Shown in pieces: positions 9,801 through 44,906 of a DNA stretch of 64,000 bases. Numbering within the stretch: the stretch's first letter is position 1; each line of letters starts with the position of its first letter. The notes under the pieces are model-generated. The model had not been told where the DNA came from, made no database searches, and saw only the letters and a list, made by a program, of their open reading frames with translations. The stretch comes from Octopus bimaculoides (Eukaryota). The stretch covers positions 115,323,065 through 115,387,064 of the forward strand of contig NC_068982.1 in assembly GCF_001194135.2 (NCBI RefSeq), in the 5' to 3' direction. The translations under genes were made by a program, and so were the position numbers.

Positions 9801-12800
9801 GAGTAAGAGAGTTTTCAAAATTTGTATTTGACACTGTATGGTGCTCTTAAAATACAGTGGAATTTATTATAAATTAATTGCACAAATAAATTTTTAATAA
9901 ATAAACTTCATCACTTTGCAGCAGGGACAGAGAGGAAATAGAACTACCGTAGTAAAATTAACTGAAACTATCAGTAGCCTAGTGATGGCCTCTGTTAACT
10001 TCAATTATACTGAACCAGTGTTGTACATTAGTTGAGAGCTCTTTTTTGCAAAATAAAACAAAACATTGGGAGGACTTTTTTTTTTTTTTTGTTACTCTTG
10101 GGAATCTCCCTCTCTCAGATCTATCAACATACAACTTTCTTTTTGTCCTTAAAAACTGAAAGGTGTTACTAATGTTATTAGAAATACGTTACTTAAATAT
10201 TTTGCTCAATATTTAAGATATCAAAGCGAATGCAAGGATAACTTACACAAACACTCATTAATATCCAATCTATATTAATATCTAACAAATTATAATTTGG
10301 CATGTGTATCCTACAAATAAACACTGGAGAAGAGAGAAAAGCTACTAATAATATTCTAAAAGAAAATTTTAAAAATTGAACCCACAGCCAGAATAATAGC
10401 AAATAATTTAAAATTACATTGAAAATATAAGTAGTAAGGATGTGTATGTATGTATATATATATATATTTGCATGTATATAAATAAAAAGTAAATAATAAA
10501 TAAAATGGTAGAATGAGTCATTTTCAGTTGAAAATCAAAAATTCCATGTGCTTCAAATCTGAACAAAATTTTGGTGAAATAAATTAGGCGATTCCCAATG
10601 TGAGTCAATAAAATGCAATAAAGTTTTTCATGTGACAGTTGTATCAAGGTACAGGTTTTGAATGCAAGTGCATATTATTATTGTATGATTGAGAATGACA
10701 GGCGGTGACTGTAAAAGTCAAACTACACTATATTACATCACCCAACTATTGGAACACTTAAGTTTGCATGAAACTATTTAAGGTAAATATAATCCTCCAG
10801 TTTCAAATAATGTTCATGATAGAATGAAAAATATCCTGTGAAACAACATAAGGATATTTGATTTTAATGGAGATTGATTATATACAAAAGTTGTACAATT
10901 AAACTAAACCCGAGGTTCCATTAATTTATGAAAGTTTAATACTTATTTATTGAGATTAATAATGGGAAGTGAAGGAAACTTAAGGAAATACAGCCTTATC
11001 TTTTTAATGTATGGGTATTAACAACTGTCACATGGTCAACTAAAGAGAATCCACATAAATGAATGTAAGTAAAACTCTGAATAAGGAATTCAGGCTTTTA
11101 TTTCTGAGTTTGATACAAAAATAGTCATGCTGAGAATAACTAAAGCTGATATCAGTGGATGCCAAAATAACCAATGTGTGGAAAGAAGAGAAAGAAAATT
11201 ACTCATTCTTTATACAGGGGTGGACTTTAAAGTGAGACAAACTTAATGAAATTATATTGTCTAAAATCGATTTAAGTAATTCCAAATCATTTAAAAATAA
11301 TATTTAAACATTTTCTCTCTTCCACCATTGATTTTTTTTTTAAAATTTAAATTAAATGCTTTTGAATATTTACAATATTCTAATAAATTCTAGCAAGGGT
11401 TTTTTAAATATACTAATTTTTAACTTTTAAAAATATTCCTATCACAGAAAGATCATTGTCCCATGATAATAGCTAAGCAAAATTTCACAGGTCAACTAAT
11501 TTTTAAAAAAATCCAAATAAATAACTTTGCTATACACAATAACATCACAAGTTTATCAAGCATGTTTTTAATATCCCCCTTTCCATCTCATTTCTCAAAA
11601 AGTTTTATGTCATGCGACAACTAGCTCCATTTTTGTTTAAATAAATCTACGAAATTTTCTTGAAAACAATATTTAAACTGTTCGATGTCAACTAAGTATA
11701 CACAGCCAGATTCAGATAAAGGCTGTCATTGTCGACATGAAGGAATACAAAATCTAAGTTATAAAAATATTTAGAATACTTGGTACTCACCATGTAGCGA
11801 GACACTAATGTCATTGCAAACAGGGAATAGTTTACATTGTCTGAAACAGGGCACTCAATTCCAGAAACATAATTCATGCATGTTAAACAAATATATACTG
11901 AATTCGAATACAATATGGTGTATAATGCCCACCAATTACTTAAGCATGAGATACACTAGTGTTTGTTGTAAATATCCAATGATATGGCTTACACAAATGC
12001 AATTAAAGCCAAAACAGCACATGAGAGGAGTGATAAGATTGCAACCCTGCATCATGCAAAATAATTGGTATAAACAATAAAAAAACAAAACAAAACAAAA
12101 CAAAAAAAAAACAGTAAATACTAGCTTAATTATCAAAAATATTTAAATTATAAAGAATATCCAGTTTTATTCTAGATATTTGCACCATGTATATTAAACA
12201 GAGCCTACAACATAAACCTCCAATGCTAAAACTAGGGAGATGAAATCATATTCATGTTTTGGGAAAAAAAAAAAAAAAAATTACTGTTACTACAGATAAA
12301 TTGGAAAAAGGATATTTAGATTAACTAGAGCAATATACAGTTGACAAAAACAGCATATAATAAAATAATTTAATATTAAAAAAATTTTTAAATGCATATC
12401 AAATGTCTGCAATAATCCATCTAATTGATAGTATCTAGACATTCAAGTAAATTACATTTATATTATTCAAACCACACATGAAATGCGTACTACAGAATTA
12501 CAATTTACCCTTAAAATTTTTTAAGCAATCACCTATATATTTAAAAAATATTTTAATGTTAAACAATCTATATAGCAAATAAATATATGTAGACAATAAA
12601 ATATATCAAAGTTAGAGAAACCTTAGAAACATACCAAGATATTTGTGGTTGTGGTTATAGCATCAAGGTTCCAATGGGTTCTTTTAATCCAAGCTAAGCA
12701 TGGCTCCACTAGATAGTGAACAGCAGCCCAAACCCACTGGTTGATGTGCTCTAGATACACCAGCAAAAGGGACCAAGGCATCTTCTACTGTTTAGTAGGA

Positions 12801-14492: not shown

Positions 14493-17174
14493 TCCACTGC
14501 CCTAATAAGCCTTTTTTTCCCAAATTCTTGATGCCATGTACAGCTCTTTTGCTAATTATTTTTTAGTAGCCAATAACTATATTACAATTTAAGCACACAC
14601 AAATGCATAATTAAATAATCTTCCTTCTTAACATAAGTCACCTAAGTGACAACTGTTTTCATCTATGAAACATGTAAGGCAGGTGTAAGTTTTTTCTCAT
14701 GTGCAAATCCAAACTAAAAATGACAAAACAATATATTTTACTAAACTATATTGGGAGAGATTAATCAACGTTAAAGAACCTTCAAAGGTCTACAAACAGC
14801 AGGATAACAAAAAATACAGCAAGCGTTAAGCTACAAAAACTCTTACACTAAGTTCTAGTAGAATTTCAAGATACTGTCATCCTATTCATAAAAATTTAGC
14901 TGTCAACGAGTGTGAAGAAGATATATATTTTAGAATCATATGTAGATAAATGGGAAAAGAGAGAGAAAGCACAGTCCTTAAATACACTTGCTGAAAGAAA
15001 CTTTTTAATACTGTCTGATTTAGTATAGTATTATTGCACATACGAGCTCAGTCATCAAATTGTGTAGAGCCTTAATATCTTGAATAATAGAAATTGAGAA
15101 GTAAGTGAATAGAAAATACGTTCAAAATTGATCAACAAACAAGCAATTAACTGTTTTTGATAACTCAAATAATTTTATGCTTAACTTCATATCATACCAA
15201 AAAACGTAACTTGTAATAAATTTTGAGGAAGTACTTTTAGCGCATACAAATAAAAGACTAAATTGTCAATATTTCAATATACATGTAATTAAAATGGCAT
15301 ATGAAAACACTGAAATAAGATTTTTGGCAAAGAATACTTTTCAATAGTACAAAGGTTGTTTTTTCTTTTAAAATATAAAGTTCTAACCAAAATATTAAAA
15401 TGTTTAGTGTGATACTTTTGAATACTATAACTTTCTGTGTAATATACTCACCCCACAGACAACGATGATTAACAATTTGTAGAAATTATACTGGAAAACT
15501 AATAACTGTTACAACATTAGAGTTGAGTCAAATGGATTAATGTTGCAACTGAAGATATCTGACGATACAAATAAAAGGAAAATGAGGCAAAGCTTAAAGT
15601 AACTGACACCAAAGAGATGACAAATCTAAAAGTTAAAGCATTTCTGTAACTCATTTAAGTGATAAAAGTTTGACAAGCATAACCATCAATTATATATGGT
15701 TTCTGTCACACTGCCATTTATGTAACTGAATTATGACAACAGTATGAAATACAGTTAAATGGAGCATAAAAAGAGATTAAAACAGGTATGAAAATAAAAA
15801 TGTCAAGCCATATATATATACATTATACATATGTTTTATATATATGCAATATATATGTAGAGAGAGGTAGAGAGAAAACTTAAAAGCATATGGTACAATA
15901 TAAAAAAAAAACTGTTATGACAAATGGTACTTTACATTAATATGCACAATATACATGGAATTAAAACAGCACTTTCAAAAATGAAATATCTCAAAAACAT
16001 AATGAAAAGGTTTACGTAACTAACTAATAATAGAAACAGAAACATCCAGAACTTATATTCGTTAAAGGAGAAAAGAATAAAAATTTTGTAGCAGACAGCC
16101 ACCTTCAAAATAAATGAATAAATAAAGAGAAAAAAATGCAAGTCACATGATTCACACACACCCTTTAAGTGAAAAACAACTGTTCGCTATATCCCTGGTA
16201 ACAAATGAATTGTGATATTATGAGTATGGCAATTAGTTCTGAATGAAGTTGACGTAAAGGGGTTAGACCTCGCTATCATATCTACAAGCTTTCTCTTACA
16301 TACACATACGCACATTATTTCACATGACCGACAATGATGTTGTAGAAACCCCATCTTGGAATTAGAAAAATATATAAACTATCAAGATGCATTTGATTTC
16401 AATTAAAACATGTGCTAGAAATTACATGTTCTATGTTACAAAGACTGTACTTCATAGAAGACATAAATACGATGGTTCATTAAGATTCAAACATCTAAAC
16501 ATTATGCTGTAAAATGTGCTACCTGAAAATAACTTACCTGACATGAGGGCAGGTTAACAGGAACTTAACACAAACACAAGTCAATACATGAAGAAACTTT
16601 ATTGCAAATCATATTTCCCCAATGATCTTACCTTCAATCAGCTGCTATCCTTTCAACATTGGCTGAAAAGCAGCACTGTATATGTTGCTAATCACACAAG
16701 GCCATGTTGTATGAAAAAATTCAAGATCTCTGATGAATATTTTACATGTACAAAAATGAAACTTATTCACAATGGTCACTGATTAATGACACTAACAAAC
16801 TATGTTAAAAATACTCATGGCTCTTAAATTACTAGATCCACAAGTTACAATGTTATACTGATGCCTCTCTGCTAACAGATGTGGAAGGGCAGGAGAGCAA
16901 GAACATATAATGATTAGGAAGATTCCACTTTCATGAAACAGCATGACTGAAGTTGGACAACACTCACGGAAGCTGCAAAATGATGGTACTCTATTATAAG
17001 TATGCTCCAATTGTGAACATAGTTTAGAATGTGCTGCAATTCCCTCCCAAACTGTTTGAGTATCTAAAGTGAAATGAAATTGCACCTCAGCACATGGAAT
17101 GTTCAAACAAATCTATAGGAAATCCAGTCCAATTTGAAACCTATAACGATAATACATGCACATACACACAGTTT

Positions 17175-17216
<42 letters not shown>

Positions 17217-17232
17217 TATACATATATATATA
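17175..17232. repeat. (TA)n microsatellite
   Basis: Direct reading. Confidence 0.95.
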
Positions 17233-17432
17233 AAACTCAGACAATACACCAATCAAAAGTATGTACATGAGTGTATACATGTACACACACACACACATAC
17301 ATGCAAACACACCCTGTTATTCAACATAGGACCACTAAAGCATGTCATAGAATCGTGGAAGTAGCAATACAACTTTAGGCTGCTTCATCAAGAAATCCAG
17401 TAGAGTCGATACATTTTTTTCCTTCAGGGATC

Positions 17433-17823
17433 CTGTGTGAAATAAACAAAAGCAAACTATTTTTGCATGGTTCAAATACGGTTCTAGTCATTTAAGAAAA
17501 CTTAGAAAGATTGTTGTAAATTAAAAATGTAAATGTAAAATGGCGAGTGGACATATAGTATAGGAAAGAAACGTCTGATATTCATAGCCATTTGATGCAC
17601 AGCAGATAAGTAACCTGGAATCCAAAAGTCAGAAGGTAACTTTAAAAAAAGATTATCCCCACCCACCTTTAATTTTGGATAAGTCATTACTTTAACAAAA
17701 TATGAAAAATCCATCAAAATGGAAGTTGAGTGATTCAAGAGCATATATATATCCAGGTACCACATAAGTGAAATAAATGTTTAATTTAAGTAATTATGTA
17801 AAATACTCACCATTAATACTTAC
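17433..17823 (-). other. Candidate second 3'UTR intron with two alternative donors (gtaagt at 17823, gtgagt at 17810)
   Basis: ATA|gtaagt and ATG|gtgagt 13 nt apart; acceptor tttgcttttgtttatttcacacag|G with AG at 17433-17434. Confidence 0.45.
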
Positions 17824-18030
17824 TATTCCTTGGAATCAATGATGAATTAGAATGCACCATCCATGTAATTACTTAGTTTAGTTTAAGAGTAATAAACTGT
17901 ACATACAACCATACCCCTTCACCCCTCAATATACCAGAAAGAAATAAGTATTACAGTACAGACTGAAAATTACAGGTTCAAGACAATCAGTCAACAGGAA
18001 GATCACCAGTTATAATGAATTTTTCTCTGG

Positions 18031-18036
18031 TTTATT
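18031..18036 (-). promoter_or_regulatory. Candidate proximal polyadenylation signal (AATAAA)
   Basis: AATAAA on the gene strand followed ~30 nt later by a U/GU-rich stretch (tcttcctgttgactgattgtcttg); further AATAAA at 18598-18603 and 18743-18748. Confidence 0.35.
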
Positions 18037-18945
18037 TTTTCAATCAAAACCAAGTTATAAACAGAAACACAAACAAGTGTGTAGGTTGCAATGCTAACTT
18101 GACAAGTACATAAACTTTGGTTAGTTCACATTTACTTAAAAGATTTTTGGCATGTATGATTACACATTTGTTATTTGTACTAAGATAAATACAAGGAAAC
18201 TAGACACCCTTACAAAAATGTGCTAAATTTCTTTTTAATATTAATGTAGTTCTTAGTAAATTAAATACTTTAAACTTTAATTTGGTTTTATAAATCAAAT
18301 GATATGTCTTCATAAATCCTAAGCAATATCTTTTAAGTTGCAATATGTTAGGCAAAGAAGACTATTCAATGAGTAATGGAGTGAGAATTACAAATATCTT
18401 AACACAATATATATTTGTTGAGCAATATTACACACAAAAACGTTTTTCTACAATTTAGGATTAAACTTAACATTGCATTAACTTACACTATGTTAACTAC
18501 TATAAATTTTTAAATGAAAATGACATAGACTGGATACAATCCAACAGGTTTAATAATACAAAAATGCTGAAACTATAAATAATGAACTACAATTACTTTT
18601 ATTTGTTTTTTAGCCACCACGAGTAGAGCAGTATAAAGTGTATTCTAACATTAAATGGTTTCATTATCCTACAAACTCTGATATAATTATCATAATATAA
18701 GTATTTTGATGCCAACTCTGTGCAGAGAGGTCAGGTGTTTAGTTTATTTTCGAAGAAAAATGCAATTAGCAAAATTCATTGATGTTACTCTATTATACAA
18801 TACTATATGTGTAATTAATAAAGTCTGTAGCAATATTCACCAGCATATTACATCACTAAATTCTTCCAAATTCTTGGTTAGTCTCAAAATTAATTGAAAA
18901 GGTGCCTCTTATTGAAACTATGAAAAATACAAATGTTAATCAATT

Positions 18946-18950
<5 letters not shown>

Positions 18951-18980
<30 letters not shown>
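18951..18980. repeat. (TG)n microsatellite within the probable 3'UTR
   Basis: Direct reading. Confidence 0.9.
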
Positions 18981-18985
<5 letters not shown>

Positions 18986-19070
18986 ATATATGTAAGGTAA
19001 AATTGTACAATATAAAAAAAAATTTAGGGACTAATTGGGATGGTGCATTCTTCTCCATTGGATCTGGAAG

Positions 19071-19132
19071 CTAGGAAAAGGGAGACATAGAAAGAGAATG
19101 GAAAGATGAGAGGAAAAACAGTTGACATTTAC
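19071..19132 (-). other. Candidate 62-nt 3'UTR intron (alternative AG at 19064-19065 gives 69 nt)
   Basis: TAG|gtaaat donor 43 nt after the stop, then an AG-free, almost pure pyrimidine tract ending cttttcctag. Confidence 0.55.
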
Positions 19133-19175
19133 CTAGTTGCTGCCATAGGTTAAAATGAAATGAATCAGAACATCA

Positions 19176-19342
19176 TCACTGGGGTTGAGGTTGTTGATTG
19201 GCCTGACCTTGGCTTCCCACTTGACCTTGTTGTTGTGCTGCTTGTTGTAATATCATATTTGCATGATAGTGCATCCCTTGTTGACGATAGTATTCTGCCC
19301 AAGCAGCACTGTAATCAGGTTGGCCAGTTTGGGGGTTGATAG
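19176..19342 (-). CDS. FUBP1-like: FUBP last coding exon: [23 protein letters not shown]...QPQPQ* (second Tyr-rich box; TGA followed by a second TGA)
   Basis: ORF 19176-19409; ttttccttag acceptor; [12 protein letters not shown] is the DUF1897/Psi A-B-box-type motif. Confidence 0.96.
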
Positions 19343-27799: not shown

Positions 27800-30700
27800 A
27801 AAATAAAAGTTGATAAAATTACTTTCGGAAAAGTGTTGTTATTATCTTTCCACATTAACACAAATTCTGTCACATATATCGTAATATATGGCACAAAATA
27901 AATCCTATTAAAACAGACTAGATGATTATTGGGTGAGTAGTAATAGAAATTCTGAAAGAGTAACTTTTAAAAGATTTTGGTCATATTGCAATATTTGAAG
28001 ATCAATACAAACCAAAATATATAGAAATTCCAATATGGAATATCAGATGTTATCTCATTGTTAGTGAAATAATTATTGGAAGTTTAACAACTATCTACTA
28101 TGTCTTGCATATATTTTACATGTAAACCTGTGAAATATATTATGGATATATTGATTTGATTGGCACTGCTAAAATGCATGTGGGGTTAATGAACTCTAAG
28201 TAAAAAAAAAAATTTTTTTAAACTTTACCTCAATCATTTAAATAATGTGCAGGAAGTTAATGAATTTATGCAGAATTACCATCATTCCCATTCAGGACAA
28301 AAATGACTAACAAACAGAAGAGTTGAAAAGATAGCCCAAAGTAATGTTGCATGTGCACGCATGTTATTATTTAACATTCACTTTCCATGCTGGCATGGGC
28401 TAGACAGGATCTGGTAGGTTGGAGAGTACATCAGGTTCTGATTTGATTTGGCATGGTTTCTACGGGTGGATACCTTTCCTAACACCAGCCACTTTGAGAG
28501 TGTAATGGGTGCACATGACACCAGCAACAGCCAAGCCACAAATATGATTTCACAGGTGCCATTCACATGACACTGGCAACAATGATGACTTCACTTGACT
28601 TGACAAGTCTTCTCATATATATATATATATATATAATTGAGAATATGTGTGTATGTGTACATCACTAAAACTTGATAACTACCCAGCTGATTTCATTCAA
28701 TTTTTCACATGCCTTACTTAGGGTCCAGGCAGTGTCATGGCTCCCCAAAATTTCCAACTTCTTGCTTAATGCGAGCCAGAGCAATCTCTTATCTCTTACA
28801 CTATTTCAGTATTACATGTCAAAAGTGAAATAATATCTATTGTAATGTGAGATAATACTTTCAGTTTTAATAGTGAAACTTAAGACTTTCAATATGTATA
28901 TAATATATACAGAATGAAACTATCAATACTGACACTATTATATCACATATATACATATCTGTGTATTTTCTGCCTGACTTGCATGTACCAGGCGGCCTGG
29001 ATCTCTGGAAAGAGTGGAAATTAGGAATGATAATTCCAATTCACAAAAATGGAAACAAGAGAGATTGCTATAATCATAGAGAAATCTACTTCTTAAGCCA
29101 CCGTGGTAAAGTCTATATTGGGTGTATGGCAAAGAGATGTAGGCATGTTGTCAGGTCCAAGCTAGCTGACACTGTGGTTTTCACTGACACAGCACAGCCA
29201 ACCAAATAGGCATACAGTGTAGATGTTTGAGAAATCATCAAGGTATGGCCAAGAGGTTTATGTTTGTTTCGTAGACCTTAAAATTATATACAACTGTGTT
29301 TCACGGAACTTGTGGTAAGTTCTGCAGGAGTATGATAGATGAAGTGGTTTTTTGTTGCTTTTGAAGTCCCTATACAAATGGTCTAGTATTTGTGTTTAGA
29401 TTAAATAAGTCAAAGCTATTCAATGTGGGTGTGAGACTGCCAAGAGTGCATAATGTCATTTCTATTCATAATCATGAAGAGGATTGACATGCACAGCCAG
29501 GATAGAAGTGCTATCAAGACCAGTGGGTGTGGGATCTGTTGGATAGAATTTGCAAATGACATTGTACCTCTTGACTCATCAAGAGATGATCTGTGATGTG
29601 CACTTGATAGGTTTGCTGTCAAGAGCTGCTTGGCAAAAGACAGACACATATCCTCTAAAAGAAGCCTGCACAATGCGCTCTACATGCGAGTTCCAGTGTA
29701 GCAGGTGGGGAAGCTCAAGTATTTTGGGGCTGTTTTCACCAATGATGGAAGGCAGGAGCTGATGCAGTAATATACCAGCTTCAGCATTTGGTCAGAAGAA
29801 AAGGAGATGTAGGTGTAGTCTACTCTTACATATGGTCAATGAATATTGGGTAATGACTGAAAAAAATACATCTGTGATATAAGAGATGGAGATCCTTCAA
29901 AGGGGTTTTGGAGTAATGTTACTTCATAGAGTGCATAGCCCAGAGGTCACAGAAATGTTCCAAGTAGAGCTGTTACTTCTCTGAACTGAGATTTCACAGT
30001 TCGTATACTATAGATGTGTGATAAGCATGCCCCAGGAAAGAATTACAGAATGCTTTACAACTACCAAGGAATTCACTGAGTAAACTCCATGTGTGTGCGT
30101 ACACACACAATCTCTCAGTGAGAAAAGTGGGGAAACCGACCCATGTAAAATTTATTTAAAGCATAAAACTGTATAAGATTTCTTTTAAATAGAAAAAGCA
30201 CTTTTGTGTAGACAGGCAAAAACAATTCTTTTTATATGCAAATCTGTGAAATATAAGGAGTTTTCTTTTTCACATGTTAAATTCATGCTTTCATTACAAG
30301 TGAGAGCACTTGTGCATGTGTGTTTTTGTTGGAAGCATCACTTTGAATACTTTTTCTAATGGAAATTGTTCATCTTCCTGCTGTACAAGCAACTTACCTA
30401 GGAAAGAAGTAATTCCAAATAAAAACCAAAACAGAATAGAAAGGTATCATTAGACTAAAAGCAATGAGGGGAGATGCATAGAAATGTTAAAGGACTAGGA
30501 AAAGTGGCAATACACTGTGAGGTCCATCCAGCCAAATGTTAGCAGAGAAAAGTGGGAGTAAAATAAGAATTTTCAACCTCACTACATTAAACATGTATAA
30601 GATGCTTATGAAGATTTTAATTTATTTTATTTTTGACATACTAGTCATCTGCATATTTATTGCTTGCAGAGTTTTAAACAAGAAAATAGAAACTCGAGTG

Positions 30701-33700
30701 AATACAAAACTACTTACGTCCATTCCACTGCCACCTGAAGCAGCTGCTCTAACACCACCTCCACCACCGCCGCCACCCCCACCATTATTATTGCCAACAG
30801 AAGAACCATATTCATTTGTCTACAGTAAAAATAGAAATAACACTTAATATGAGACAAATACCATGCGAATTAGTGAATCAAGAGGTTTAAAATTAAGAGT
30901 TTGTTAAAATTTGTTATTTACTACACTTAGCAAATTTTTATTGAAAATCTTTTATCAACCTGTTCACTTAACCTCATCAAAATTATTTATGCACCTGATT
31001 ATAAAACAATCATGCACTTGAATGGTTGATATAATAGCTATATCAACCATTACATGTATATAATCATCATTGGAAATGTGCTGTGCGTGAGAAGACCCGG
31101 CAAGCCAAGTAAGATCGTTGCCAGTGCCCCTGGACTGGCTCTTGTGCGGGTGGCACATGAGATGCACCATTTTAAGCGTGGCCGTTGCCAGTACCGCCTG
31201 ACTGGCTCCCGTAGGATTTTCGAGTGAGATCGTTGCCAGTGCCCCTGGACTGGCTTGTGCAGGTGGCACATAAAAGACACCATTTCGAGCGTGGCCGTTT
31301 TCGTGCGGGTGACAAGTAAAAGCACCCACTACACTCTCTGAGTGGTTCGCGTTAGGAAGGGCATCCAGCTGTAGAAACTCTGCCAAATTAGATTGGAGCC
31401 TGGTGTTGCCATCCGGTTTCACCAGTCCTCAGTCAAATCGTTCAACCCATGCTAGCATGGAAAGCGGACGTTAAACGATGATGATGATATTTATATTACT
31501 GCAGCATGAAAGGTGTTTATAAGCCATTTAAGAAACACAAAAAACATTAGATTCACTTCAACATTTAAATTTAATTTGCCAAAATATTTTCGTCGCTTTG
31601 AGACCATGACCTGTTCACTGACAAAATTCCGTGCTGCATCTCTTATATCACAGAATTTTGTCAGTGAACAGGTCACAGTCTCAAAGCGACGAAAATATTT
31701 TGGCAAGTTAAATTTAAATGTATAAGGGAATCTAACAGTTTTTGTGTGTTTCTTAAATGGCTTATAAACACCTTCCACGCTGCAATTGTTTTCGTTCTAG
31801 CATACGATCTCAGATCAGGTCGCTTGCTATGCAAGTACATCTCTGTAATACTTATATTATTTTAGACAGAAAAAAAACATACAGCTAAATAAGATGTAAT
31901 TGATATTTAAGAATGATCACTGTAAGAGTGAGTCAGATATGAAATAAAATTTATAACTTACCATTGTACCATCTTTGTCTGCTAACAATTGCATAACCAT
32001 ATCCCTGGCTCTCTAAAATATACAAAAATCCAAGTTAGAAATACAACCAAAAGTAAAGTAAACATCATCTTTCTTTGCATTAATTGCAATTCAGACAACT
32101 TACCCCACATCTTGAAGGCTCTCCAGTGATACGTAATGGCTTGTCGTGTGCACTGGGTAGACTACTGTCCTGAATCATCACCATTTTCACATTAGCCTGG
32201 TCCTGTAACAAGAAATTACGAGAAATATTAACTATTAAGATTTCGAAATTAAAATACAAATTTATATATTTTGCACATTTATGTGAAATGTTTTCATTTC
32301 ACTAACCTGTTAGTAAAACTGACAAGCATAAACCCTTGCATTACCAACCTGGTTGGATATCTTGGGTAATCTGCTTGAAAATGGCCAACCAAAATATCCT
32401 AGTCATTTATTTCAGTGCAAATCTCTTTAGTACATTTGTGAAAGTTACGAATTCTTGGAGAATTTTTTTTTCCCACATTGATTTTCCTAAGTGTTTCCTT
32501 ACAGATGCCAAGTGGATATCAGATTTATGATGTCAAACAGCTGAGGCTGAATTCAAAGTATTTTTGAATAATAATAATAAAAAAAAAAACAAAAAGGGAA
32601 ATATCTAAGAAAATATATGGCAAACATGAAAACCAAACGTGTGATTATGAATCAGACATTTCTTTTTCTGAAAATGAAACTATCTTAACAGTTTGGATAG
32701 TGATAATAAAAGGGGGGGAAGAAAAAAAAAAAAAACAATCAGAAATTTATGCCTGCACATAATAAAAATTTAATAACTGCTTATCTTAGTTATTTTTAAG
32801 GAAGATATTAGACCTAGTGACAGTCTTTCCAAGGAAACAAAACCATTGGATTTTTTAAATTTATTTTTTCCATTGAAGTGGCTGATTTACAAATATTTTA
32901 TTTCAAATTTAATGTGGTTTGCATTAGGAAGGGCATCCAGCTGTAGAAACCAAGCCAAATCAGATTGGAACATGGTGCAGCTCTCAAATTGTTCAACCCA
33001 TGCCAACATGAAAAACAGACATTAAAGGATGATGATGTGTGTGACAGATTTTGATTTTGAATCATTATATGTTAAAGGATGATGATGAGGTGTGTGTGTG
33101 TGACAAATTTTGATTAATTTCGATTGTGAATCATTATATGTGTTTCTGTGTATTTATATATGCGAGTGAGTTTATTTCATTTCCTAGTTTTCTTCAAAGA
33201 CAAGTTCCAATATTTTGTTTTAACTTTATGATACACATTGTCTTCTATGCATTAAGCTCATCTGATACATGATCAAGTAATTTCCACAATTCTTCTCTAT
33301 AAAAATTTGGTTGCATACCCATTGAGTATTAAATAATTCATTTTTTATGCTGATGTATAAATAAAAATTTTTCTTTTTCCTTTTACCTATAATTAGATTT
33401 GCTTTAAGACAAAAATTGTGCAACTGAATTAGCTAAGAACCTTTTGTTAAATTGGGTTCCAAAAATCACATTAATATCTTATCTTTTATTGGTTTCACTC
33501 ATTTGACTGCAGTCATACTGGGGTACTGCCTATGAGGGCTTTAGTCAAACAAATCAACCCTAACTCTTATTTAAGCCTGGTACTTATCCTATCAGTCTCT
33601 TGCCGAACTGCTAAGTAATGGGGACATAAACTAACACCAGTTTTCAAGAGGTGATGGTGGACAAAGACACAAGCACAGAGATATATACATATATGACAGG

Positions 33701-36700: not shown

Positions 36701-39700
36701 CTGCAATTTGATAACCATAAAATTGGCTTCAATTCACTTATTTGATTTTCTATAACAATTTTGTCAAAGAACATCTAATCTATTCTGTATTTCCTTGCCT
36801 TGTTCAGAAGCATCAACAGCACCACTGATATTTTTAGGGACAGGGACAACCAACCCACTCACTTTTTTCGTAGCCATTTCAGTTAAGGTAATTGTGGAAA
36901 CAAAATTCTGTTGTCCATCTTTTCTCCTGAGAAAAATGTTTCATTTCTATGGACACCTCAATATTTCACACATCTCAGATTAGAAGCACGAGTTGTGTAA
37001 ACACATTGTATATTTTCTAATGTGAACATGTAAAAGAGTAAAGCAATTCTTGCAAATGGTTCTGCCTACCCTATATATCCAAAGAAAACTAGGCGTCTTC
37101 AACCCCCAATTTGCAAAGATAATGGCCTGAACTGCTGATGGCTTACCTATACACATTTCAGTTGCATGTAGAGGAACCACTGATTATTAACTCATCTATA
37201 TTAAATATATAATATAAAAATCTCTTTTTTCAAAACCCAGTCAAAATTTAATACTGAAGCATAACGTTGTAAACCCTAAGTCAATAGCTAGTTGCAGAAG
37301 TTTGTTACTTTAATTTGTAAATGTATTCGTGGTTTCTCTGAAATAATCTGCACACCTGAAATTCAATCGACTTGCACTCAAAATGAAGACTGAATTTTGC
37401 AAAGGTATTAATCTAAATTTTATATTTAGAAACATATTAAAAATAACAAAGATTAGGAACAAAACCCTTCAAAATCTATTTGGAATGCTGAGTAACAAGA
37501 AGATATTACTATCATAACTGAACCCCATTAGGCACACCAAGCAAGTGTAGACCCATGCAAACCTAGTTACATATTAAGAAACATGAAGAAATTTACCAAC
37601 GAAGATTAAAACAGATCTTTTAATTGAATTGCAAACCCAATAATATATTTTAACATGCAATACAAACAAGATTCCAAAATATATCTATCACATTTAGAAA
37701 ACAACATATAAAATTAGTTTGAAATTCAAAGCCTTTACTTGAAAAAAAGTCATTATTCATCAGCAGTTTAACGAACAAAATCTACATTTCCTAGACCATA
37801 AATCAAGTATTAAATTTCATATCAAACAGTACTTTATGCAGTGTGAGTTGTAGTCAGCATATGATGATCTGGTTGAATCCAAATTTACAATGTATCTTAA
37901 CCAAAGTGATTAAGTTACACAAGGAAATAATGTTAAGGATTCAATAATACTTTTCTTTTTATATGGAGATAATAGCGTAAGTTGGGAACAAGGTATTGAA
38001 TGGGTATGGCATGAATAATGTGTGTATATTATAGTAAGTGAAGAGAATTTTCATAATGTTAATCTGCTTATATTAATACCCATCCACATAACTAGCTCTA
38101 AAGATGCCACCAGCTCATGCTGAAAGCTAAGCCAGGTTTTTCAAACATAAGCAACCTAATTATACACACATCATTGCATATGATGTAATGAAGGAGTTTG
38201 TATATGGTCACTAAACATGCTGGAAACCAGTCAAATCCCTTCATAACACATACTTCTGCTCAAAAAAGGAACATATTAAAGGATGTCCCAAGTTCTCTGC
38301 ACAATGGAAAAAGATAAACCAATAATGTCTAGAAAACTTTTGATCAAGCCTAACCTGGAGCTGAACATCATTGCTTAAAACTCACTGAAAAACTTTGTGT
38401 CCTTTTTTCCTTCTATTTGAGACAGTGTTCAGGTGTTTTGAGAGATGGGGTATGATCATGCCCTTTGTGAGAACTGTGTAATTGTTCTGCATTAACTGTT
38501 TTAAATTAATGACAAGAAAATCATATGCAGAGTGGGAATCCAGAAGATTGATGACTTGGGATTGGAGGTGTGGACAGTATGGATAATGGTAAAAGGATAG
38601 GTAGACAGTATGAGGATAGGTAGACAAAATAAATTGGATGAGCCCAAGTTAAGTTAGCAGCACATGAGCAACACTAGTGGCCATTCTTTGGATGCAGTCT
38701 AGGATGTGTAGCAGTAGCACTATTCTGGGGTCTCAACTGAACTTTGTAAGGGGCTGGTAGTCATAATGGGGTCAAATATTTTCTAGATCTCAAGAGCAAG
38801 TGAAGTCTTTGCTATATTGAGGAAGAGTATTCTTCAAAAGAAATCCTCAGCTGTGATAAAGTCTGGCATTTTCGGCTACTTTAAGGGTTCTTGTTATATG
38901 CGCGTGCACACATGGAGTTAATGCTTTTTTGATGTGTAGTGATTGTGACCCTTCACTGTCAAAGAAGACAAAACTGGCATAAGGCCACAACAGAACAAGC
39001 AAGATCTCTATTCATTGAGTAAATGCAGATTTGGCATATTTGGGTTGCATGTGGATGCTGCCTAGGTGTAGAGGGTTAGTGAGGAGTGAATGATTGAGTG
39101 TTATGGAAGGTAATAGAAAGTAAAATGATAAAGCAATCCTTGAAGTATAGCAGAGCTCTATTGAAGTGCAATGGTAAGAAGCCATCGAGTCACGAGACAG
39201 GAAATAGATGGAACTGAGTACAACTGTGTTGTAAAACTTCCTTCAGCTGAATTCCACAGATGGAGAGATTTGTGAGATCAACAAAGCTGAGAGCTTTGCT
39301 AATTTTGAAGGCAGTATCAGTATTCAACTAATTTCTTGAGTGAGAGTGTGTTGGTTATAACTTGCTTTACAAAAGCCATACTAGGGCATTAAGGAGGGAG
39401 AGATGTTGAAGAAAATTGCCAACATGTACAGCCTTGACATGTAAGAAAAATCCTGAAGTTTGTTCATTAATGCTCCTGTCTTAATAACATGATGGCGCAA
39501 TTTGAAGACCATAAAACTGGCTGTAAATTTACTCTTGATTTTCCACAACAATTTCTTCAAAGAACATCTAATCTATTCTGTATTTCTTTGCCTTGTTCAG
39601 AAGCATCAGCAGCACCACTGATATTTGTAGGGGCAGGAGCAACCAACCCACTCACTTTTTTTCCCCGAGTCATTGAAAAAAATTGTTTGGCAGTGAAATA

Positions 39701-41807
39701 GGGTGATAGCTTGGAACACCAGAGGGTTTGCCCTTTTTGGGAAAGAAACTGTTATCTCTAAACACTCAGATATATCCCTGTAGAGTGAGCAACAAATTGA
39801 AGAGTTTGGTGAGGTTGAAGGTTAGGTCTGGAGCATATTGTTTGAAGATTATTAATGGAAAGAGGGAAATAATATTGCCAGGGTCAGTGGCCTCGACAAT
39901 ATTATGTCTTCAAAGTTTTATGGTCTTCAAATTGCGCCATCATGTTATTAAGACAGGAGCATTAATGAACAAACTTCAGGATTTTTCTTACATGTCAAGG
40001 CTGTACATGTTGGCAATTTTCTTCAACATCTCTCCCTCCTTAATGCCCTAGTATGGCTTTTGTAAAGCAAGTTATAACCAACACACTCTCACTCAAGAAA
40101 TTAGTTGAATACATGTAGTGGAAAGGGATGGCCTTAGTTTTACCTAGTGTACAATTTTTCTCTATGAATGTACTACATACAGAAGCAAAGTAAAAGGTGC
40201 ATTCAGTGAAATGGGTAGATCTTTTTGGTAAGTGACTAAAAAATATGGGCTGCAGTTAGAGAGCTGATGAGGATTTGCAAAGTGGCACGCAAGAGATGGC
40301 TGATGATGTAGTGCTGAGTAAGAGCCATCCAGTTTATAGGAGAAAATGATTTTTCTGAAAGCATTTTAGGCTGTACTTTTGTCTGAACTAATGCATCATC
40401 ATCTTTCATTTTCAGATTAATTTTATTTTATTCCTACTATGTCACACTAATTTTTGCATATTTACATGAGTGATAATTTGGAGTAAATGTTTTAGTCTTA
40501 TATGTAAACGGTCCTTCTCCTGCTAACCACACAAATAGAATCTACAGCGATAAAACGAAGGCAATTGAATTTTTATGAAAAATGGCCTTTTAGATGAAGA
40601 AAATGTTGCACCATATCATCATTGTGGTGGAGAAATGAATGAAGCTTGAAGAGAGAAAAGGGGCAAAATTTCCCCAATTTTTCCTTTAGAAATTGAAAAG
40701 TAAACTAAAAAGTAACCTAAAGTAATCACCCTTTCAGTTATAGATCACATGCCATTGTAGCACTGTCTGTTTTATTTATTCAACAAAGCAAACAGGAGAA
40801 AGTAGCATTACATACATTGCTTGGAGTGAACAACAACAGTAGTATGACCTAAGCTGATATGGTCAGTGTTCCAGCCATTTTGCCCGGCAAAGATTTATTA
40901 TTACTTTTGCATTGTGCTATAGATGCCAATGTTATTAACCCAAGTTTTAATAACAAAATAGCTATGATACATGAAATTTCCACATGAGCATGACTTGGAA
41001 GGGATCATTACAGCCCGAATAAGTTCCTTTTAAGGGTTACTTTTCCCCAATATGGATCAGAGGACCAAGCCTCTTACACAATTCCTCTGGCATAGTTTCA
41101 ATGGATGCGCTTAGTAATACTGACTACTTTACAGTACTCAGTACATTAGATAGGTGTTTTCTTTACATTGTTCTTTCATTTACCAACCACTTCACAAAGT
41201 GTACCTTGGAAGACCAAAGCCTCCATTCACTCAAAGCAGAAGATGAATAGAACAAAGAATACAAATGCAACAATTCAAAAACTCTAGGATGATAGGAGAG
41301 CGAACAATGGAAGAAAGATAGTGATAGGCAGCTAAATGCTGGGGTGGATAGATGGGATGATGCAAAAAAATAGTATGTGGAGGAGAATAATCTAAGTCAC
41401 CAAAGAATAAAAAAAGGATAATGGGAAGTGAAGAGACTAAAGCATAGTAATGAAGGTTGGTGGTGAGTGTCAGAATCTCCCACCTTTTTTTAATGCAAAT
41501 TTTTTTTAAATAAAAGACAAGTGCACAATTTTAAAGAAACTTCCAAAAAATGCCTTCATCCAATACATTTTTGCAGTAGAAATTATTTTTTTTCAAATGG
41601 CAATTTCTATATCTTATAGCCCAACCACTCTTGTTTCTCGCAACCAGATGCATTGTGCTACAGTGAGGACTTACTAAGAATAGCAAATTCTTTACGAACA
41701 CTTTATTAGTGGATTTATTTTGCTAATGTGTAAATGTCTAACAAATTCAAAAATGTTTTGCTATTATCAATGTTTTCATTGTTAAGCCAGTACAATTTTG
41801 TTATATA

Positions 41808-43984: not shown

Positions 43985-44906
43985 ATTTTTTTTAATATGA
44001 AAATATTTTAACATTCAAAAAACATTCTCAAATTGAAAAACATTGCATCTGAATAAATTTTTATGTAAACTAACTTCTTAATTTAGAGGGTGATATCTTA
44101 AAATCCAGGCTGACCAATAATTCAATTATTCTGAACTTTATTATTACACCAGAACAAAAAAATAAATAAATAAAATAAATTTTAAAAAAGCCCATTAATT
44201 ATACTTAAAATCCAAACAAATTTTGATTAAGATTCCAAACTACTTGTTTACACTATCAGGAGCTAACAATGGTTGTTAATTCCGCTAGAAACAAACTAGT
44301 TTGAAAATCAGCAGGATAAGGGTTAATGCCTTCCTGTAGGATGCTTTAGGGTAACTGATATGGTCAGGAGCTAAAAAACAAACCTACCTGGTGCTATTTG
44401 AATTTTACAACTCGTTTCTGCTTGTAACCTTGATATCTGTTCACCACCTTTTCCTATAACTAAAAAAAGGACATGGAATGGTTTTAAGAATAATTCTACC
44501 TTTCTCTATTAATTTCTAAGTGTAAAAACAACTATACAAAAGAATTATTTTATTAAACTACTAGAAAGATAGTAATCAATTAAGGATGTGCTGGAGTAAA
44601 ATAAATTTTGGTAAATGACCATATAAAGTAAAGAAAGTTATATACCTCAAGATAAAAATAGACACTTTATTTTTAAAAGGAAATAGCCTGGTGAAATAAA
44701 AAGTCGACTTAAAAACCTCAAATCCTTTCACACTAAAATCAAATTTCAGAAACAAAGATATGAATAGGAAAAATAATTTTAGTTAAGCAGAATAGAAAGC
44801 TTGATAGAAATAGAACTCCATAATTGAAAACAAAAGACAGGAGAATAAAACAAAACAACGCAGATATGAAAACTGTATGGTAAGAGAATAATATTAAAAT
44901 ATATAT

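What the first reader, a model, noticed from the sequence alone, without database searches (positions are those of the whole stretch)
17849..19051. 14-bp perfect long-range complement joining both ends of the putative UTR exon
Seen: GGATGGTGCATTCT (19038-19051) is the exact reverse complement of AGAATGCACCATCC (17849-17862), ~1.2 kb away, and it is GC-balanced in very AT-rich DNA. In the transcript the arms sit 19 nt inside the 19071 acceptor and 25-38 nt before the twin donors. Pairing extends imperfectly outward (CAAUGG/UCAUUG, then UUCC/GGAA) almost to the splice sites. Inference: the helix would loop out ~1.2 kb and juxtapose acceptor and donors, affecting exon definition, skipping or back-splicing. 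My rough estimate is that such a match is expected by chance only a few percent of the time in a 2-kb region; its position adds to the signal.
Basis: partly seen in the sequence, partly recalled or inferred. Interest (0 to 1): 0.7.

Follow-up and report, generated by a model that had tools for sequence, protein, structure and literature searches.

The report
Conserved long-range helix in FUBP 3'UTR intron
A 14-base-pair RNA helix joining two sites 1.2 kb apart, just after the stop codon of a cephalopod FUBP/KHSRP-type gene, is kept almost unchanged in a distantly related cuttlefish together with the splice-site-like motifs beside it, so it is probably a real splicing-control structure, but it lies inside a 3'UTR intron rather than in an exon of the main mRNA.

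Summary
In detail: AGAATGCACCATCC (17849-17862) and its exact reverse complement (19038-19051) are there. Within this one genome it is not compelling. Shuffles give about 1.6 such inverted repeats per window and the real window holds 16.

The comparative evidence makes it convincing. The minus-strand gene is a cephalopod FUBP/KHSRP orthologue whose stop codon is at 19178-19176. Five cuttlefish RNA-seq contigs splice 19133 directly to 17432. Both arms therefore lie in a 1700-nt 3'UTR intron (19132-17433), not in an exon of the dominant mRNA.

In the Acanthosepion pharaonis genome the orthologous intron (1150 nt) is otherwise unalignable, yet it keeps both arms: 14/14, and 13/14 with a single G-C to G.U change. 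It also keeps the tandem AG acceptor-like motif 11-20 nt upstream of the helix and the twin consensus donors 24-29 nt downstream. The loop differs in length (1175 vs 512 nt) and in sequence.

The helix folds with probability near 1 in both species. My best reading is a selected helix that clamps a pseudo-exon's ends together inside the 3'UTR intron, as a poison or decoy exon. There is no compensatory covariation (two species only) and no transcript evidence of inclusion or back-splicing.

The parts
19038..19051 (-). 5' arm of the helix (RNA: AGAAUGCACCAUCC), 81 nt inside the 3'UTR intron
   Evidence: The cuttlefish has AGAATGCACCATCT at L088 31340-31353. A 15-nt exact shared block, GAAGAATGCACCATC, covers it.
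17849..17862 (-). 3' arm of the helix (RNA: GGAUGGUGCAUUCU)
   Evidence: It is identical in the cuttlefish at L088 31866-31879. A 16-nt exact shared block, ATGGATGGTGCATTCT, covers it.
17433..19132 (-). 3'UTR intron (1700 nt; GT at 19132-19131, AG at 17434-17433) that contains both arms
   Evidence: Cuttlefish mRNA contigs L082-L086 join the orthologous flanks directly. Both splice sites are conserved in the window. This is inferred for the window species and observed only in the cuttlefish.
19133..19342 (-). Last coding exon of the FUBP/KHSRP orthologue. The stop TGA is at 19178-19176 and the exon ends 43 nt after the stop.
19064..19125 (-). Pyrimidine-rich tract ending in tandem acceptor-like AGs (AG 19072-19071 and 19065-19064), 19 and 12 nt upstream of the 5' arm
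   Evidence: The cuttlefish has tandem AGs (L088 31318-19 and 31327-28) 20 and 11 nt upstream of its arm.
17803..17824 (-). Twin consensus 5' splice-site motifs (GTAAGTAT, then GTGAGTAT 13 nt later), 24 and 37 nt downstream of the 3' arm
   Evidence: this is the only GTRAGT pair within 20 nt on either strand of the window. The cuttlefish has GTAAGTATTACAGGTGGGTAT with the same 13-nt spacing, 18/22 identical.
17863..19037 (-). Loop closed by the helix (1175 nt). It is not conserved and contains a (CA)n run at about 18945-18990.
   Evidence: The cuttlefish loop is 512 nt. Identity is at shuffle level.
17433..17542 (-). Conserved 3' end of the intron (branch, pyrimidine tract and AG region)
   Evidence: Exact shared blocks TGCAAAAATAGTTT and TTTGCTTTTGTTTATTTCA. 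Identity is 0.80 against 0.62 for shuffles.
16580..17432 (-). 3'UTR exon 2. It is deeply conserved, with a 69-nt identical block at 17318-17386, and has AATAAA at 16603-16598 inside a 47-nt identical block.
   Evidence: The 3' end near 16580 is inferred from the conserved poly(A)-signal block.
19265..19277 (-). Coding-exon box GGGAUGCACUAUC (codons for G-M-H-Y-H). It is the second-best partner of the 3' arm in the whole pre-mRNA and so a possible competing helix.
   Evidence: -19.5 kcal/mol here and -20.0 in the cuttlefish (L088 31142-31154). It ranks second of 22,697 and of 11,791 windows, and the third-best partner reaches only about -17. Its role is unexplained.

Best explanation
**Setting.** The two arms form a selected long-range RNA helix in the pre-mRNA of a cephalopod FUBP/KHSRP (Drosophila PSI) orthologue. 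The helix lies inside the intron that interrupts the 3'UTR 43 nt after the stop codon.

**Proposed mechanism.** The helix closes off a variable, unconserved loop (1175 nt here, 512 nt in the cuttlefish). This places a conserved acceptor-like element (pyrimidine tract plus tandem AGs, 12-19 nt upstream) next to a conserved pair of strong donor motifs (24-37 nt downstream). The result is a compact pseudo-exon whose effective length is about 45-50 nt instead of 0.6-1.25 kb. Splicing factors assembling on this pseudo-exon would compete with the normal removal of the whole intron. Normal removal uses a weak GUAAAU donor and gives a junction close enough to the stop codon to escape nonsense-mediated decay. 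The pseudo-exon would divert transcripts to a non-productive fate, either a poison isoform with a far-downstream junction or a retained intron (decoy exon). This would tune the level of this RNA-binding protein.

**Shown:**
- the helix sequence;
- its conservation and that of the flanking motifs;
- the intron in cuttlefish mRNAs;
- the in-silico stability of the helix.

**Inferred:**
- that the window species splices in the same way;
- that the helix forms in vivo;
- that the motifs bind the splicing machinery;
- the regulatory outcome.
For: **Gene context**
- The gene is identified by the FUBP hit from A. pharaonis, E = 2e-177, and by the exon map.
- Five independent RNA-seq contigs (L082-L086) splice across the region. 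The donor GCAACTAG|GTAAAT and the acceptor CACAG|GATCCC are conserved in the window.

**Conservation**
- Between the two orthologous introns, the exact shared blocks of at least 12 nt are the 5' arm (15 nt), the 3' arm (16 nt) and the 3' splice-site region. A 10-nt block covers the first twin donor. All are collinear.
- Shuffles give a maximum shared length averaging 11.6 nt and 0.63 blocks of at least 12 nt.
- The loop and the post-donor stretch are at shuffle-level identity.
- Of the 14 pairs, 13 are invariant and 1 changes C-G to U-G, which still pairs.
- Spacing of the AGs and GTs relative to the arms is conserved: 19/12 vs 20/11 nt, and 24/37 vs 29/42 nt.

**Folding**
- Helix energy is -23.9 kcal/mol here and -22.2 in the cuttlefish.
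- It is in the minimum-free-energy structure with base-pair probabilities of 0.76-1.0 in both species.
- The net gain is about 12 kcal/mol.
- The 5' arm is the best partner of the 3' arm across the entire pre-mRNA in both species.

**Literature context**
- Functional long-range splicing helices of -15 to -20 kcal/mol are known (PMC8052449).
- Decoy exons are described in PMC6097662 and PMC7373989.
- Conserved poison exons in splicing-factor genes are described in PMC12632421.
Against: - Only two species could be compared. There is no double-sided compensatory change, so base pairing itself is not demonstrated by covariation.
- No transcript that uses the internal AGs or the twin donors was seen. 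All five cuttlefish contigs skip the region. However, decay-targeted or nuclear isoforms would be rare in assemblies.
- No RNA data from the window species could be retrieved.
- The acceptor-like element is much weaker in the cuttlefish, where the pyrimidine tract is short.
- Thermodynamic prediction of 0.5-1.2-kb-span helices ignores kinetics and bound proteins.
- The window holds 16 comparable inverted repeats, so without the orthologue this one would not stand out.
Confidence: 0.55

Rival explanations
1. The two conserved blocks are selected for reasons other than pairing with each other. They could be two copies in opposite orientation of a binding site for a protein, either on the DNA as an intronic enhancer or on the RNA. 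They could also be independent splicing enhancer or silencer elements belonging to the acceptor-like and donor-like motifs. Their complementarity would then be incidental to function.
For: - There is no compensatory change; 13 of 14 pairs never vary, which says nothing for or against structure.
- Conserved sequence extends a little beyond the helix on each block: TGGNGA upstream of the 5' arm and AT before the 3' arm.
- PMC8052449 warns that inverted transcription-factor sites mimic conserved complementary regions.
Against: - All 14 positions are identical between the two inverted copies in both species. That is longer and stricter than typical protein sites.
- The only change is the one transition that keeps pairing.
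- The blocks are each other's best partners across 24-45 kb of pre-mRNA.
Confidence: 0.17
2. The helix is real but acts only as an intron 'zipper'. It shortens the effective distance between the true 5' and 3' splice sites of the 3'UTR intron, from 1700 to about 525 nt, and so helps the intron's removal. The nearby AG and GT motifs would not be used.
For: - Both arms lie in the intron that cuttlefish mRNAs remove.
- The loop varies in length while the arms are fixed.
- Looping-out helices that aid splicing are known (my own knowledge of yeast intron stems; PMC8052449).
Against: - This does not explain why the twin donors are conserved (18/22, same 13-nt spacing) or why the tandem AGs keep their distance from the arms.
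- The 3' arm is still 415-553 nt from the 3' splice site.
Confidence: 0.13
3. One reading: 19070-17825 is a genuine UTR exon that is included in mature transcripts or back-spliced into a circular RNA. The helix would promote exon definition or circularisation.
For: - Splice-site motifs are conserved at both ends, and the helix juxtaposes them.
- The adjacent upstream intron is too short for easy linear splicing. This would favour back-splicing if the sites are used at all (inference).
Against: - All five cuttlefish mRNA contigs skip it.
- The upstream intron would be 37-46 nt in the cuttlefish.
- The arms are 14 bp and lie inside the exon. Known circularising repeats are at least ~30-40 nt and lie in the flanking introns (PMC4201285).
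- The exon interior is neither conserved nor coding, and the reading frames differ between the species (read).
Confidence: 0.1
4. Chance complementarity, or a relic of a transposon or inverted duplication, with no function.
For: - About 1.6 such repeats are expected per window by chance and 16 are observed.
- The window contains obvious transposon-type inverted repeats at 39320-40112 and 31510-31774.
Against: - Both arms are conserved at orthologous, collinear positions in an intron that is otherwise unalignable.
- There is no target-site duplication next to the arms (GATGAATT vs TCTCCATT).
- There is no other copy in the window.
- There are no Rfam hits.
Confidence: 0.05

Closest known systems
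Pairs of conserved complementary regions and 'RNA bridges' in pre-mRNAs (long-range helices that regulate splicing; Kalmykova et al. 2021, PMC8052449; IRBIS, PMC4174434)
   Same: - Two short complementary boxes hundreds to thousands of nt apart in one pre-mRNA.
- Both boxes are conserved in orthologues.
- The energy is in the range of validated cases (-15 to -25 kcal/mol).
- The boxes are positioned next to splice signals.
   Different: - The known catalogue is human/vertebrate or Drosophila; this one is in a cephalopod.
- Here the boxes sit just inside a pseudo-exon's two ends, so the helix loops out the exon's interior. It does not loop out an exon with its splice sites or bridge a protein site.
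- There is no covariation and no experimental support yet.
Decoy exons that promote intron retention (SF3B1, OGT; PMC6097662, PMC7373989), and conserved poison exons or 3'UTR splicing in splicing-factor genes (PMC12632421, PMC11632617)
   Same: - A conserved, non-coding, normally skipped exon-like unit with good splice-site motifs inside a larger intron of an RNA-binding-protein gene.
- The predicted outcome is non-productive (retention or decay).
   Different: - No isoform evidence here.
- The unit is long (0.6-1.25 kb) and would need the helix to be recognised as an exon.
- It lies in a 3'UTR intron only 43 nt after the stop codon.
Inverted-repeat-driven back-splicing (circular RNA biogenesis; Liang & Wilusz 2014, PMC4201285)
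   Same: Complementary sequences bring a downstream donor close to an upstream acceptor.
   Different: - Known repeats lie in the flanking introns and are at least ~30-40 nt; these are 14 nt and lie inside the exon.
- No back-splice junction data are available.
Pseudo-5' splice sites bound by U1 snRNP, including the PSI-dependent silencer of the Drosophila P element and ultraconserved pseudo-5' splice sites (PMC7776569, PMC4647562, PMC13100119)
   Same: - Tandem consensus donor motifs that are conserved yet apparently not used in the main mRNA.
- The host gene is the orthologue of PSI, which works through U1 at such sites. This parallel rests on my own knowledge plus PMC13100119's citation of Wang et al. 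2016.
   Different: No evidence that the FUBP protein binds here. The sites lie in the gene's own 3'UTR intron and are coupled to a helix.

Membership tests
Conserved long-range pre-mRNA helix (PCCR type) | Two complementary segments in the same primary transcript | tested here: met
   The match is 14/14. Both arms lie in the 3'UTR intron of one gene.
Conserved long-range pre-mRNA helix (PCCR type) | Both segments conserved at orthologous positions | tested here: met
   14/14 and 13/14 in A. pharaonis. These are among the few exact shared blocks of at least 12 nt in the intron.
Conserved long-range pre-mRNA helix (PCCR type) | Compensatory (double-sided) substitutions | tested here: inconclusive
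   Zero double changes and one one-sided change (C-G to U-G), from two species only.
Conserved long-range pre-mRNA helix (PCCR type) | Pairing shown in vivo, or by disrupting and compensatory mutations | not testable with these tools
   Only thermodynamic prediction is available.
Poison or decoy exon | Exon-like unit with conserved acceptor and donor motifs inside a larger intron | tested here: met
   Tandem AGs and twin GTRAGT motifs are conserved with conserved spacing.
Poison or decoy exon | Isoforms that include it, or retention of the host intron | tested here: not met
   Five of five cuttlefish contigs skip it. Rare isoforms could not be searched.
Poison or decoy exon | Sensitivity to nonsense-mediated decay, or nuclear detention | not testable with these tools
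   Only the geometry is known. The default junction is 43/39 nt after the stop, and the alternative junction would be more than 1 kb after it.
Inverted-repeat-driven circular RNA | Repeats in the introns flanking the circularised exon | tested here: not met
   The arms lie 19 nt and 24 nt inside the candidate exon.
Inverted-repeat-driven circular RNA | Repeat length of about 30-40 nt or more | tested here: not met
   The core is 14 bp and the extension is not significant. The threshold is taken from PMC4201285.
Inverted-repeat-driven circular RNA | Back-splice junction reads | not testable with these tools
   No read-level data are available.
DNA transposon or MITE with terminal inverted repeats | Target-site duplication flanking the repeats | tested here: not met
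   The flanks are GATGAATT and TCTCCATT, with no direct repeat of 2-8 nt at the junctions.
DNA transposon or MITE with terminal inverted repeats | Further copies in the genome | tested here: not met
   No other copy in the window with up to 2 mismatches, apart from one chance-level hit. Only 64 kb was searched.

The most novel reading that the evidence does not exclude
A three-box RNA switch in the orthologue of a splicing regulator. The 3' arm (17862-17849) can pair with either of two partners. One is the intronic 5' arm (19051-19038). The other is a look-alike box in the last coding exon (19277-19265, the codons for G-M-H-Y-H), which is its second-best partner in the whole pre-mRNA in both species.

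Pairing with the exon box would loop out the stop codon and the weak normal donor. It would also bring the strong twin donors to within about 90 nt of the exon's acceptor, defining a long exon that leads to nonsense-mediated decay. Pairing with the intronic arm would prevent this. The choice would set FUBP output, possibly under feedback by the FUBP/PSI protein acting with U1 snRNP at the twin donors. Such a device would have been conserved since the octopus-cuttlefish-level divergence.
Probability: 0.15. Interest if true: 0.8.

Novelty: new variant of a known kind. Interest (0 to 1): 0.58.

Why it matters
**If the helix is functional**
- It would be a clear invertebrate (cephalopod) example of a deeply conserved long-range RNA structure that controls how a 3'UTR intron of an RNA-binding-protein gene is processed.
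- The geometry is unusual. The stem lies just inside a pseudo-exon's two ends and collapses a 0.6-1.25-kb interior of free sequence and length, so the splicing machinery could treat it as a short exon.
- That would add a structural route to exon definition of very long exons.
- It would also be a candidate homeostatic circuit for the FUBP/KHSRP/PSI family.

**Methodological point**
- The single-genome statistic was uninformative, with 16 similar repeats in the window.
- One orthologous locus turned an unremarkable repeat into a strong candidate.

Tried and rejected
1. **Transposon reading.** There is no target-site duplication, no other copies and no internal coding remnant.
2. **Longer imperfect helix reaching the splice sites.** Flank-shuffle and random-flank tests were not significant in either species.
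3. **Known RNA families.** Rfam gives only sub-threshold microsatellite-derived miRNA-like hits at 17150-17320.
4. **Analogous helix-plus-donor arrangement in FUBP 3'UTR introns of other phyla.** None was found in 80 metagenome-derived host loci. The one long repeat (L040, 24 nt) looks like a MITE with internal sub-repeats.
5. **More cephalopod orthologues or transcripts of the window species.**
   - Exact-protein look-ups of window ORFs failed, except for one 55-aa ORF without contigs.
   - The ENA contig L087 ends before the last exons.
   - L089 is too short.
   - Cuttlefish intron ORFs are not on record.
   - The 50%-identity library collapses the cephalopods into P0004.
6. **Alternative coding use of the internal acceptors.** The reading frames after the AGs differ between the species, so the segment is not coding (read).
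7. **ADAR editing substrate.** Fourteen base pairs is short for that, and it could not be tested.
8. **Global MAFFT alignment of the two introns.** It mis-anchored and was replaced by local and anchored alignments.
Full report
**Observation**

The sequence is as described. AGAATGCACCATCC lies at 17849-17862 and its exact reverse complement GGATGGTGCATTCT at 19038-19051. There is no other exact copy in the window.

- An AG at 19072-19071, and a second at 19065-19064, lie 19 and 12 nt upstream of the 5' arm. They are preceded by a roughly 50-nt pyrimidine-rich tract.
- Two consensus donors, GTAAGT (17824) and GTGAGT (17811), lie 24 and 37 nt downstream of the 3' arm.
- This is the only GTRAGT pair within 20 nt on either strand of the window.

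**Chance within this genome**

Shuffled versions of the window give 1.5-1.7 non-low-complexity perfect inverted repeats of at least 14 nt within 2 kb. The real window holds 16, several of them transposon-like. This genome has ten times more.

At the exact offset of the focal pair it is the strongest duplex of 4163 sampled pairs (-37.1 kcal/mol against -30.2 for the next). That offset was chosen after the fact.

The outward imperfect extension of the pairing is not beyond chance:
- Window: p = 0.045 with shuffled flanks and 0.14 with random genomic flanks.
- With 40-nt flanks in both species, p is 0.1-0.2 with shuffled flanks. With random genomic flanks the cuttlefish reaches 0.013-0.026, which I put down to flank composition.

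On single-genome evidence alone I would have called it unremarkable.

**Folding**

- The 14-bp core is worth -23.9 kcal/mol.
- In the 1246-nt and 1361-nt contexts all 14 pairs are in the minimum-free-energy structure, with probabilities of 0.76-1.00.
- Forcing the 5' arm single-stranded costs 12 kcal/mol.
- This shows the helix is competitive at equilibrium. It says nothing about kinetics or bound proteins.

**What the locus is**

The minus strand carries a KH-domain gene of the FUBP/KHSRP/PSI family.
- The best hit is FUBP of the cuttlefish Acanthosepion pharaonis, E = 2e-177.
- Exons run from about 61230 down to the last coding exon, 19342-19133, which holds the FUBP_C motif and the stop codon TGA at 19178-19176.
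- Both arms therefore lie downstream of the stop codon.
- The window species is a cephalopod other than this cuttlefish. Coding exons are about 75-93% identical and intron interiors do not align. Which species it is I cannot say; an octopod is a guess.

**Transcript evidence from the orthologue**

The 90% cluster of the cuttlefish protein contains a 641-aa Logan protein. It is encoded on five RNA-seq contigs from five different runs (L082-L086).
- In all five, the sequence 39 nt after the stop (...GCAATAAG) is followed directly by GATCCCTGAAG....
- In the window that second sequence lies at 17432 and below, right after ...TTTCACACAG.
- Mapped on the cuttlefish genome (L088), the junction defines a 3'UTR intron, L088 31283-32432 (1150 nt).
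- The window equivalent is 19132-17433 (1700 nt), with donor CTAG|GTAAAT and acceptor CACAG|GATCCC.

That the window species does the same is an inference from the conserved splice sites and flanks. No RNA data for it could be retrieved.

The downstream UTR exon is strikingly conserved. It has a 69-nt identical block at 17386-17318 and about 1 kb at 74% identity. A 47-nt identical block carries AATAAA at 16603.

**The decisive result**

Both arms are present in the cuttlefish intron:
- AGAATGCACCATCT at L088 31340-31353. It has one change, C to T, opposite a G, so G-C becomes G.U.
- GGATGGTGCATTCT at L088 31866-31879, which is identical.

Between the two introns the exact shared blocks of at least 12 nt are:
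- the 5' arm (15 nt);
- the 3' arm (16 nt);
- the 3' splice-site region (14 + 19 nt).

A 10-nt block, GTAAGTATTA, covers the first twin donor. All are collinear. Shuffles give a mean maximum shared length of 11.6 nt and 0.63 blocks of at least 12 nt.

Anchored segment alignments show:
- the loop (1175 vs 512 nt) and the stretch after the donors at shuffle-level identity;
- the arms at 13/14 and 14/14;
- the twin donors at 18/22, with the same 13-nt spacing.

The tandem AGs are 20 and 11 nt upstream of the cuttlefish arm, against 19 and 12 nt here. The donors are 29 and 42 nt downstream, against 24 and 37 nt.

The cuttlefish helix (-22.2 kcal/mol) is also in the minimum-free-energy structure, with probabilities of 0.77-1.00. 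In both species each arm is the other's best partner across the whole pre-mRNA, 45 kb and 24 kb respectively.

The formal pair count is 13 invariant, 1 one-sided change and 0 compensatory. The case for pairing therefore rests on joint conservation of two mutually complementary islands with a free loop, not on covariation.

**Mechanism**

The conserved unit is [pyrimidine tract, AG..AG]-(12-20 nt)-[helix]-(24-29 nt)-[GTAAGT..13 nt..GTGRGT]. It sits 62-69 nt (window) or 37-46 nt (cuttlefish) after a conserved weak donor (GTAAAT, lacking G at +5). It lies 380-520 nt before the conserved acceptor.

With the helix formed, the acceptor-like and donor-like motifs are about 45-50 nt apart through the base of the stem. 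That is the size of a short exon, whatever the length of the loop. I therefore think the helix serves to make this long, sequence-free segment recognisable as an exon-like unit.

Ordinary cassette inclusion from the adjacent donor is doubtful because the upstream gap is so short, especially in the cuttlefish. More likely outcomes are:
- A decoy complex that hinders removal of the whole intron (PMC6097662, PMC7373989).
- Use of the twin donors with the distal acceptor, which puts a junction more than 1 kb after the stop.

The default junction is only 43/39 nt after the stop. That is inside the distance usually tolerated by nonsense-mediated decay (established 50-55-nt rule, my own knowledge).

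This would be a homeostatic device typical of RNA-binding-protein genes (PMC12632421). All of this paragraph is inference.

**Rival explanations**

- The blocks are conserved protein sites that merely happen to be complementary (a caveat raised in PMC8052449).
- The helix is a plain intron 'zipper'.
Against circularisation, known circularising repeats are at least ~30-40 nt and intronic (PMC4201285).
- Chance or a transposon relic. This is now strongly disfavoured. There is no target-site duplication, no other copy and no Rfam hit, and both arms are conserved at orthologous positions.

**An unexplained extra**

The second-best partner of the 3' arm in the whole pre-mRNA, in both species, is a box in the last coding exon.
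- It is GGRAUGCACUAUC, at window 19277-19265 and L088 31142-31154.
- It forms 13 bp with 2-3 G.U pairs, at -19.5 and -20.0 kcal/mol. The third-best partner reaches only about -17.
- It resembles the 5' arm, and its differences from that arm are transitions that keep wobble pairing.
- This could be coincidence or a competing helix. I give it as the most novel reading.

**Limits**

- Only two species were compared.
- There are no read-level data.
- The splicing pattern of the window species is inferred.

**Verdict**

However, the segment is a pseudo-exon inside a 3'UTR intron, not an exon of the main mRNA. It is a new variant of known long-range splicing helices and of poison or decoy exons.

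Noticed in passing
window 16566-17432 (minus strand); L088 32433-33349: The 3'UTR exon downstream of the intron is far better conserved than the coding exons. It has identical blocks of 69, 47, 44 and 26 nt and about 1 kb at 74% identity. These include a block with AATAAA (16603) followed by a GU-rich run, which is probably the main poly(A) site.
   Followed up: partly
window 19265-19277 (minus strand); L088 31142-31154: A coding-exon box (codons G-M-H-Y-H) resembles the 5' arm. It is the second-best partner of the 3' arm across the whole pre-mRNA in both species (13 bp, about -20 kcal/mol).
   Followed up: partly
window 44323-44519 and 49522-49734 (minus strand); L088 18661-18856 and 17002-17212: Two exons encoding most of the first KH domain are skipped in all five cuttlefish mRNA contigs and in P0004, but are present in P0173. 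The 44323-44519 exon has about 93% identity extending into both intron flanks, which is typical of a regulated alternative exon.
   Followed up: partly
loci L001-L081 (other invertebrate FUBP orthologues): In many of them a consensus 5' splice site (for example CAG|GTATGT or GAG|GTGCGT) follows the stop codon within about 10-50 nt. A 3'UTR intron starting close to the stop codon therefore seems to be an old feature of this gene family.
   Followed up: partly
window 39320-40112: A perfect inverted repeat with 199-nt arms separated by about 395 nt. It looks like a transposon or foldback element in an intron of the gene.
   Followed up: no
window 31510-31774: A near-perfect long hairpin, with 30-nt and 29-nt perfect sub-arms, that looks like a MITE. 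A further 18-nt inverted repeat pairs 29871-29888 with 31637-31654.
   Followed up: no
window 18945-18994 and 17264-17312: On the transcript, a (CA)n microsatellite in the intron loop is complementary to a (GT)n-rich run in the downstream UTR exon (49 nt, 78% complementary). The cuttlefish has (AT)n at the second position, so this is not conserved.
   Followed up: no
window 16187-16354 (minus strand): This 55-aa ORF inside the conserved 3'UTR exon is the only one of ten window ORFs tested that exists as a protein entry in the public collection (UniRef/MetaClust). It is probably an annotation artefact of the source genome.
   Followed up: partly
window 11755-11882 and 12598-12713 (minus strand); L088 40823-40955 and 39471-39588: Two further conserved blocks (79-83% identity) lie 4-5 kb downstream of the poly(A) signal. 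One ends in CATG|GTGAGT. They may be exons of a neighbouring gene on the same strand.
   Followed up: no
window about 54190-54250: A run of 54 N, which is an assembly gap flanked by (TA)n-like sequence.
   Followed up: no
L040 453-476 and 1014-1037: A 24-nt perfect inverted repeat in the 3'UTR intron of an unrelated invertebrate FUBP orthologue. It has many internal sub-repeats and looks like a MITE, not an analogue of the cephalopod helix.
   Followed up: partly
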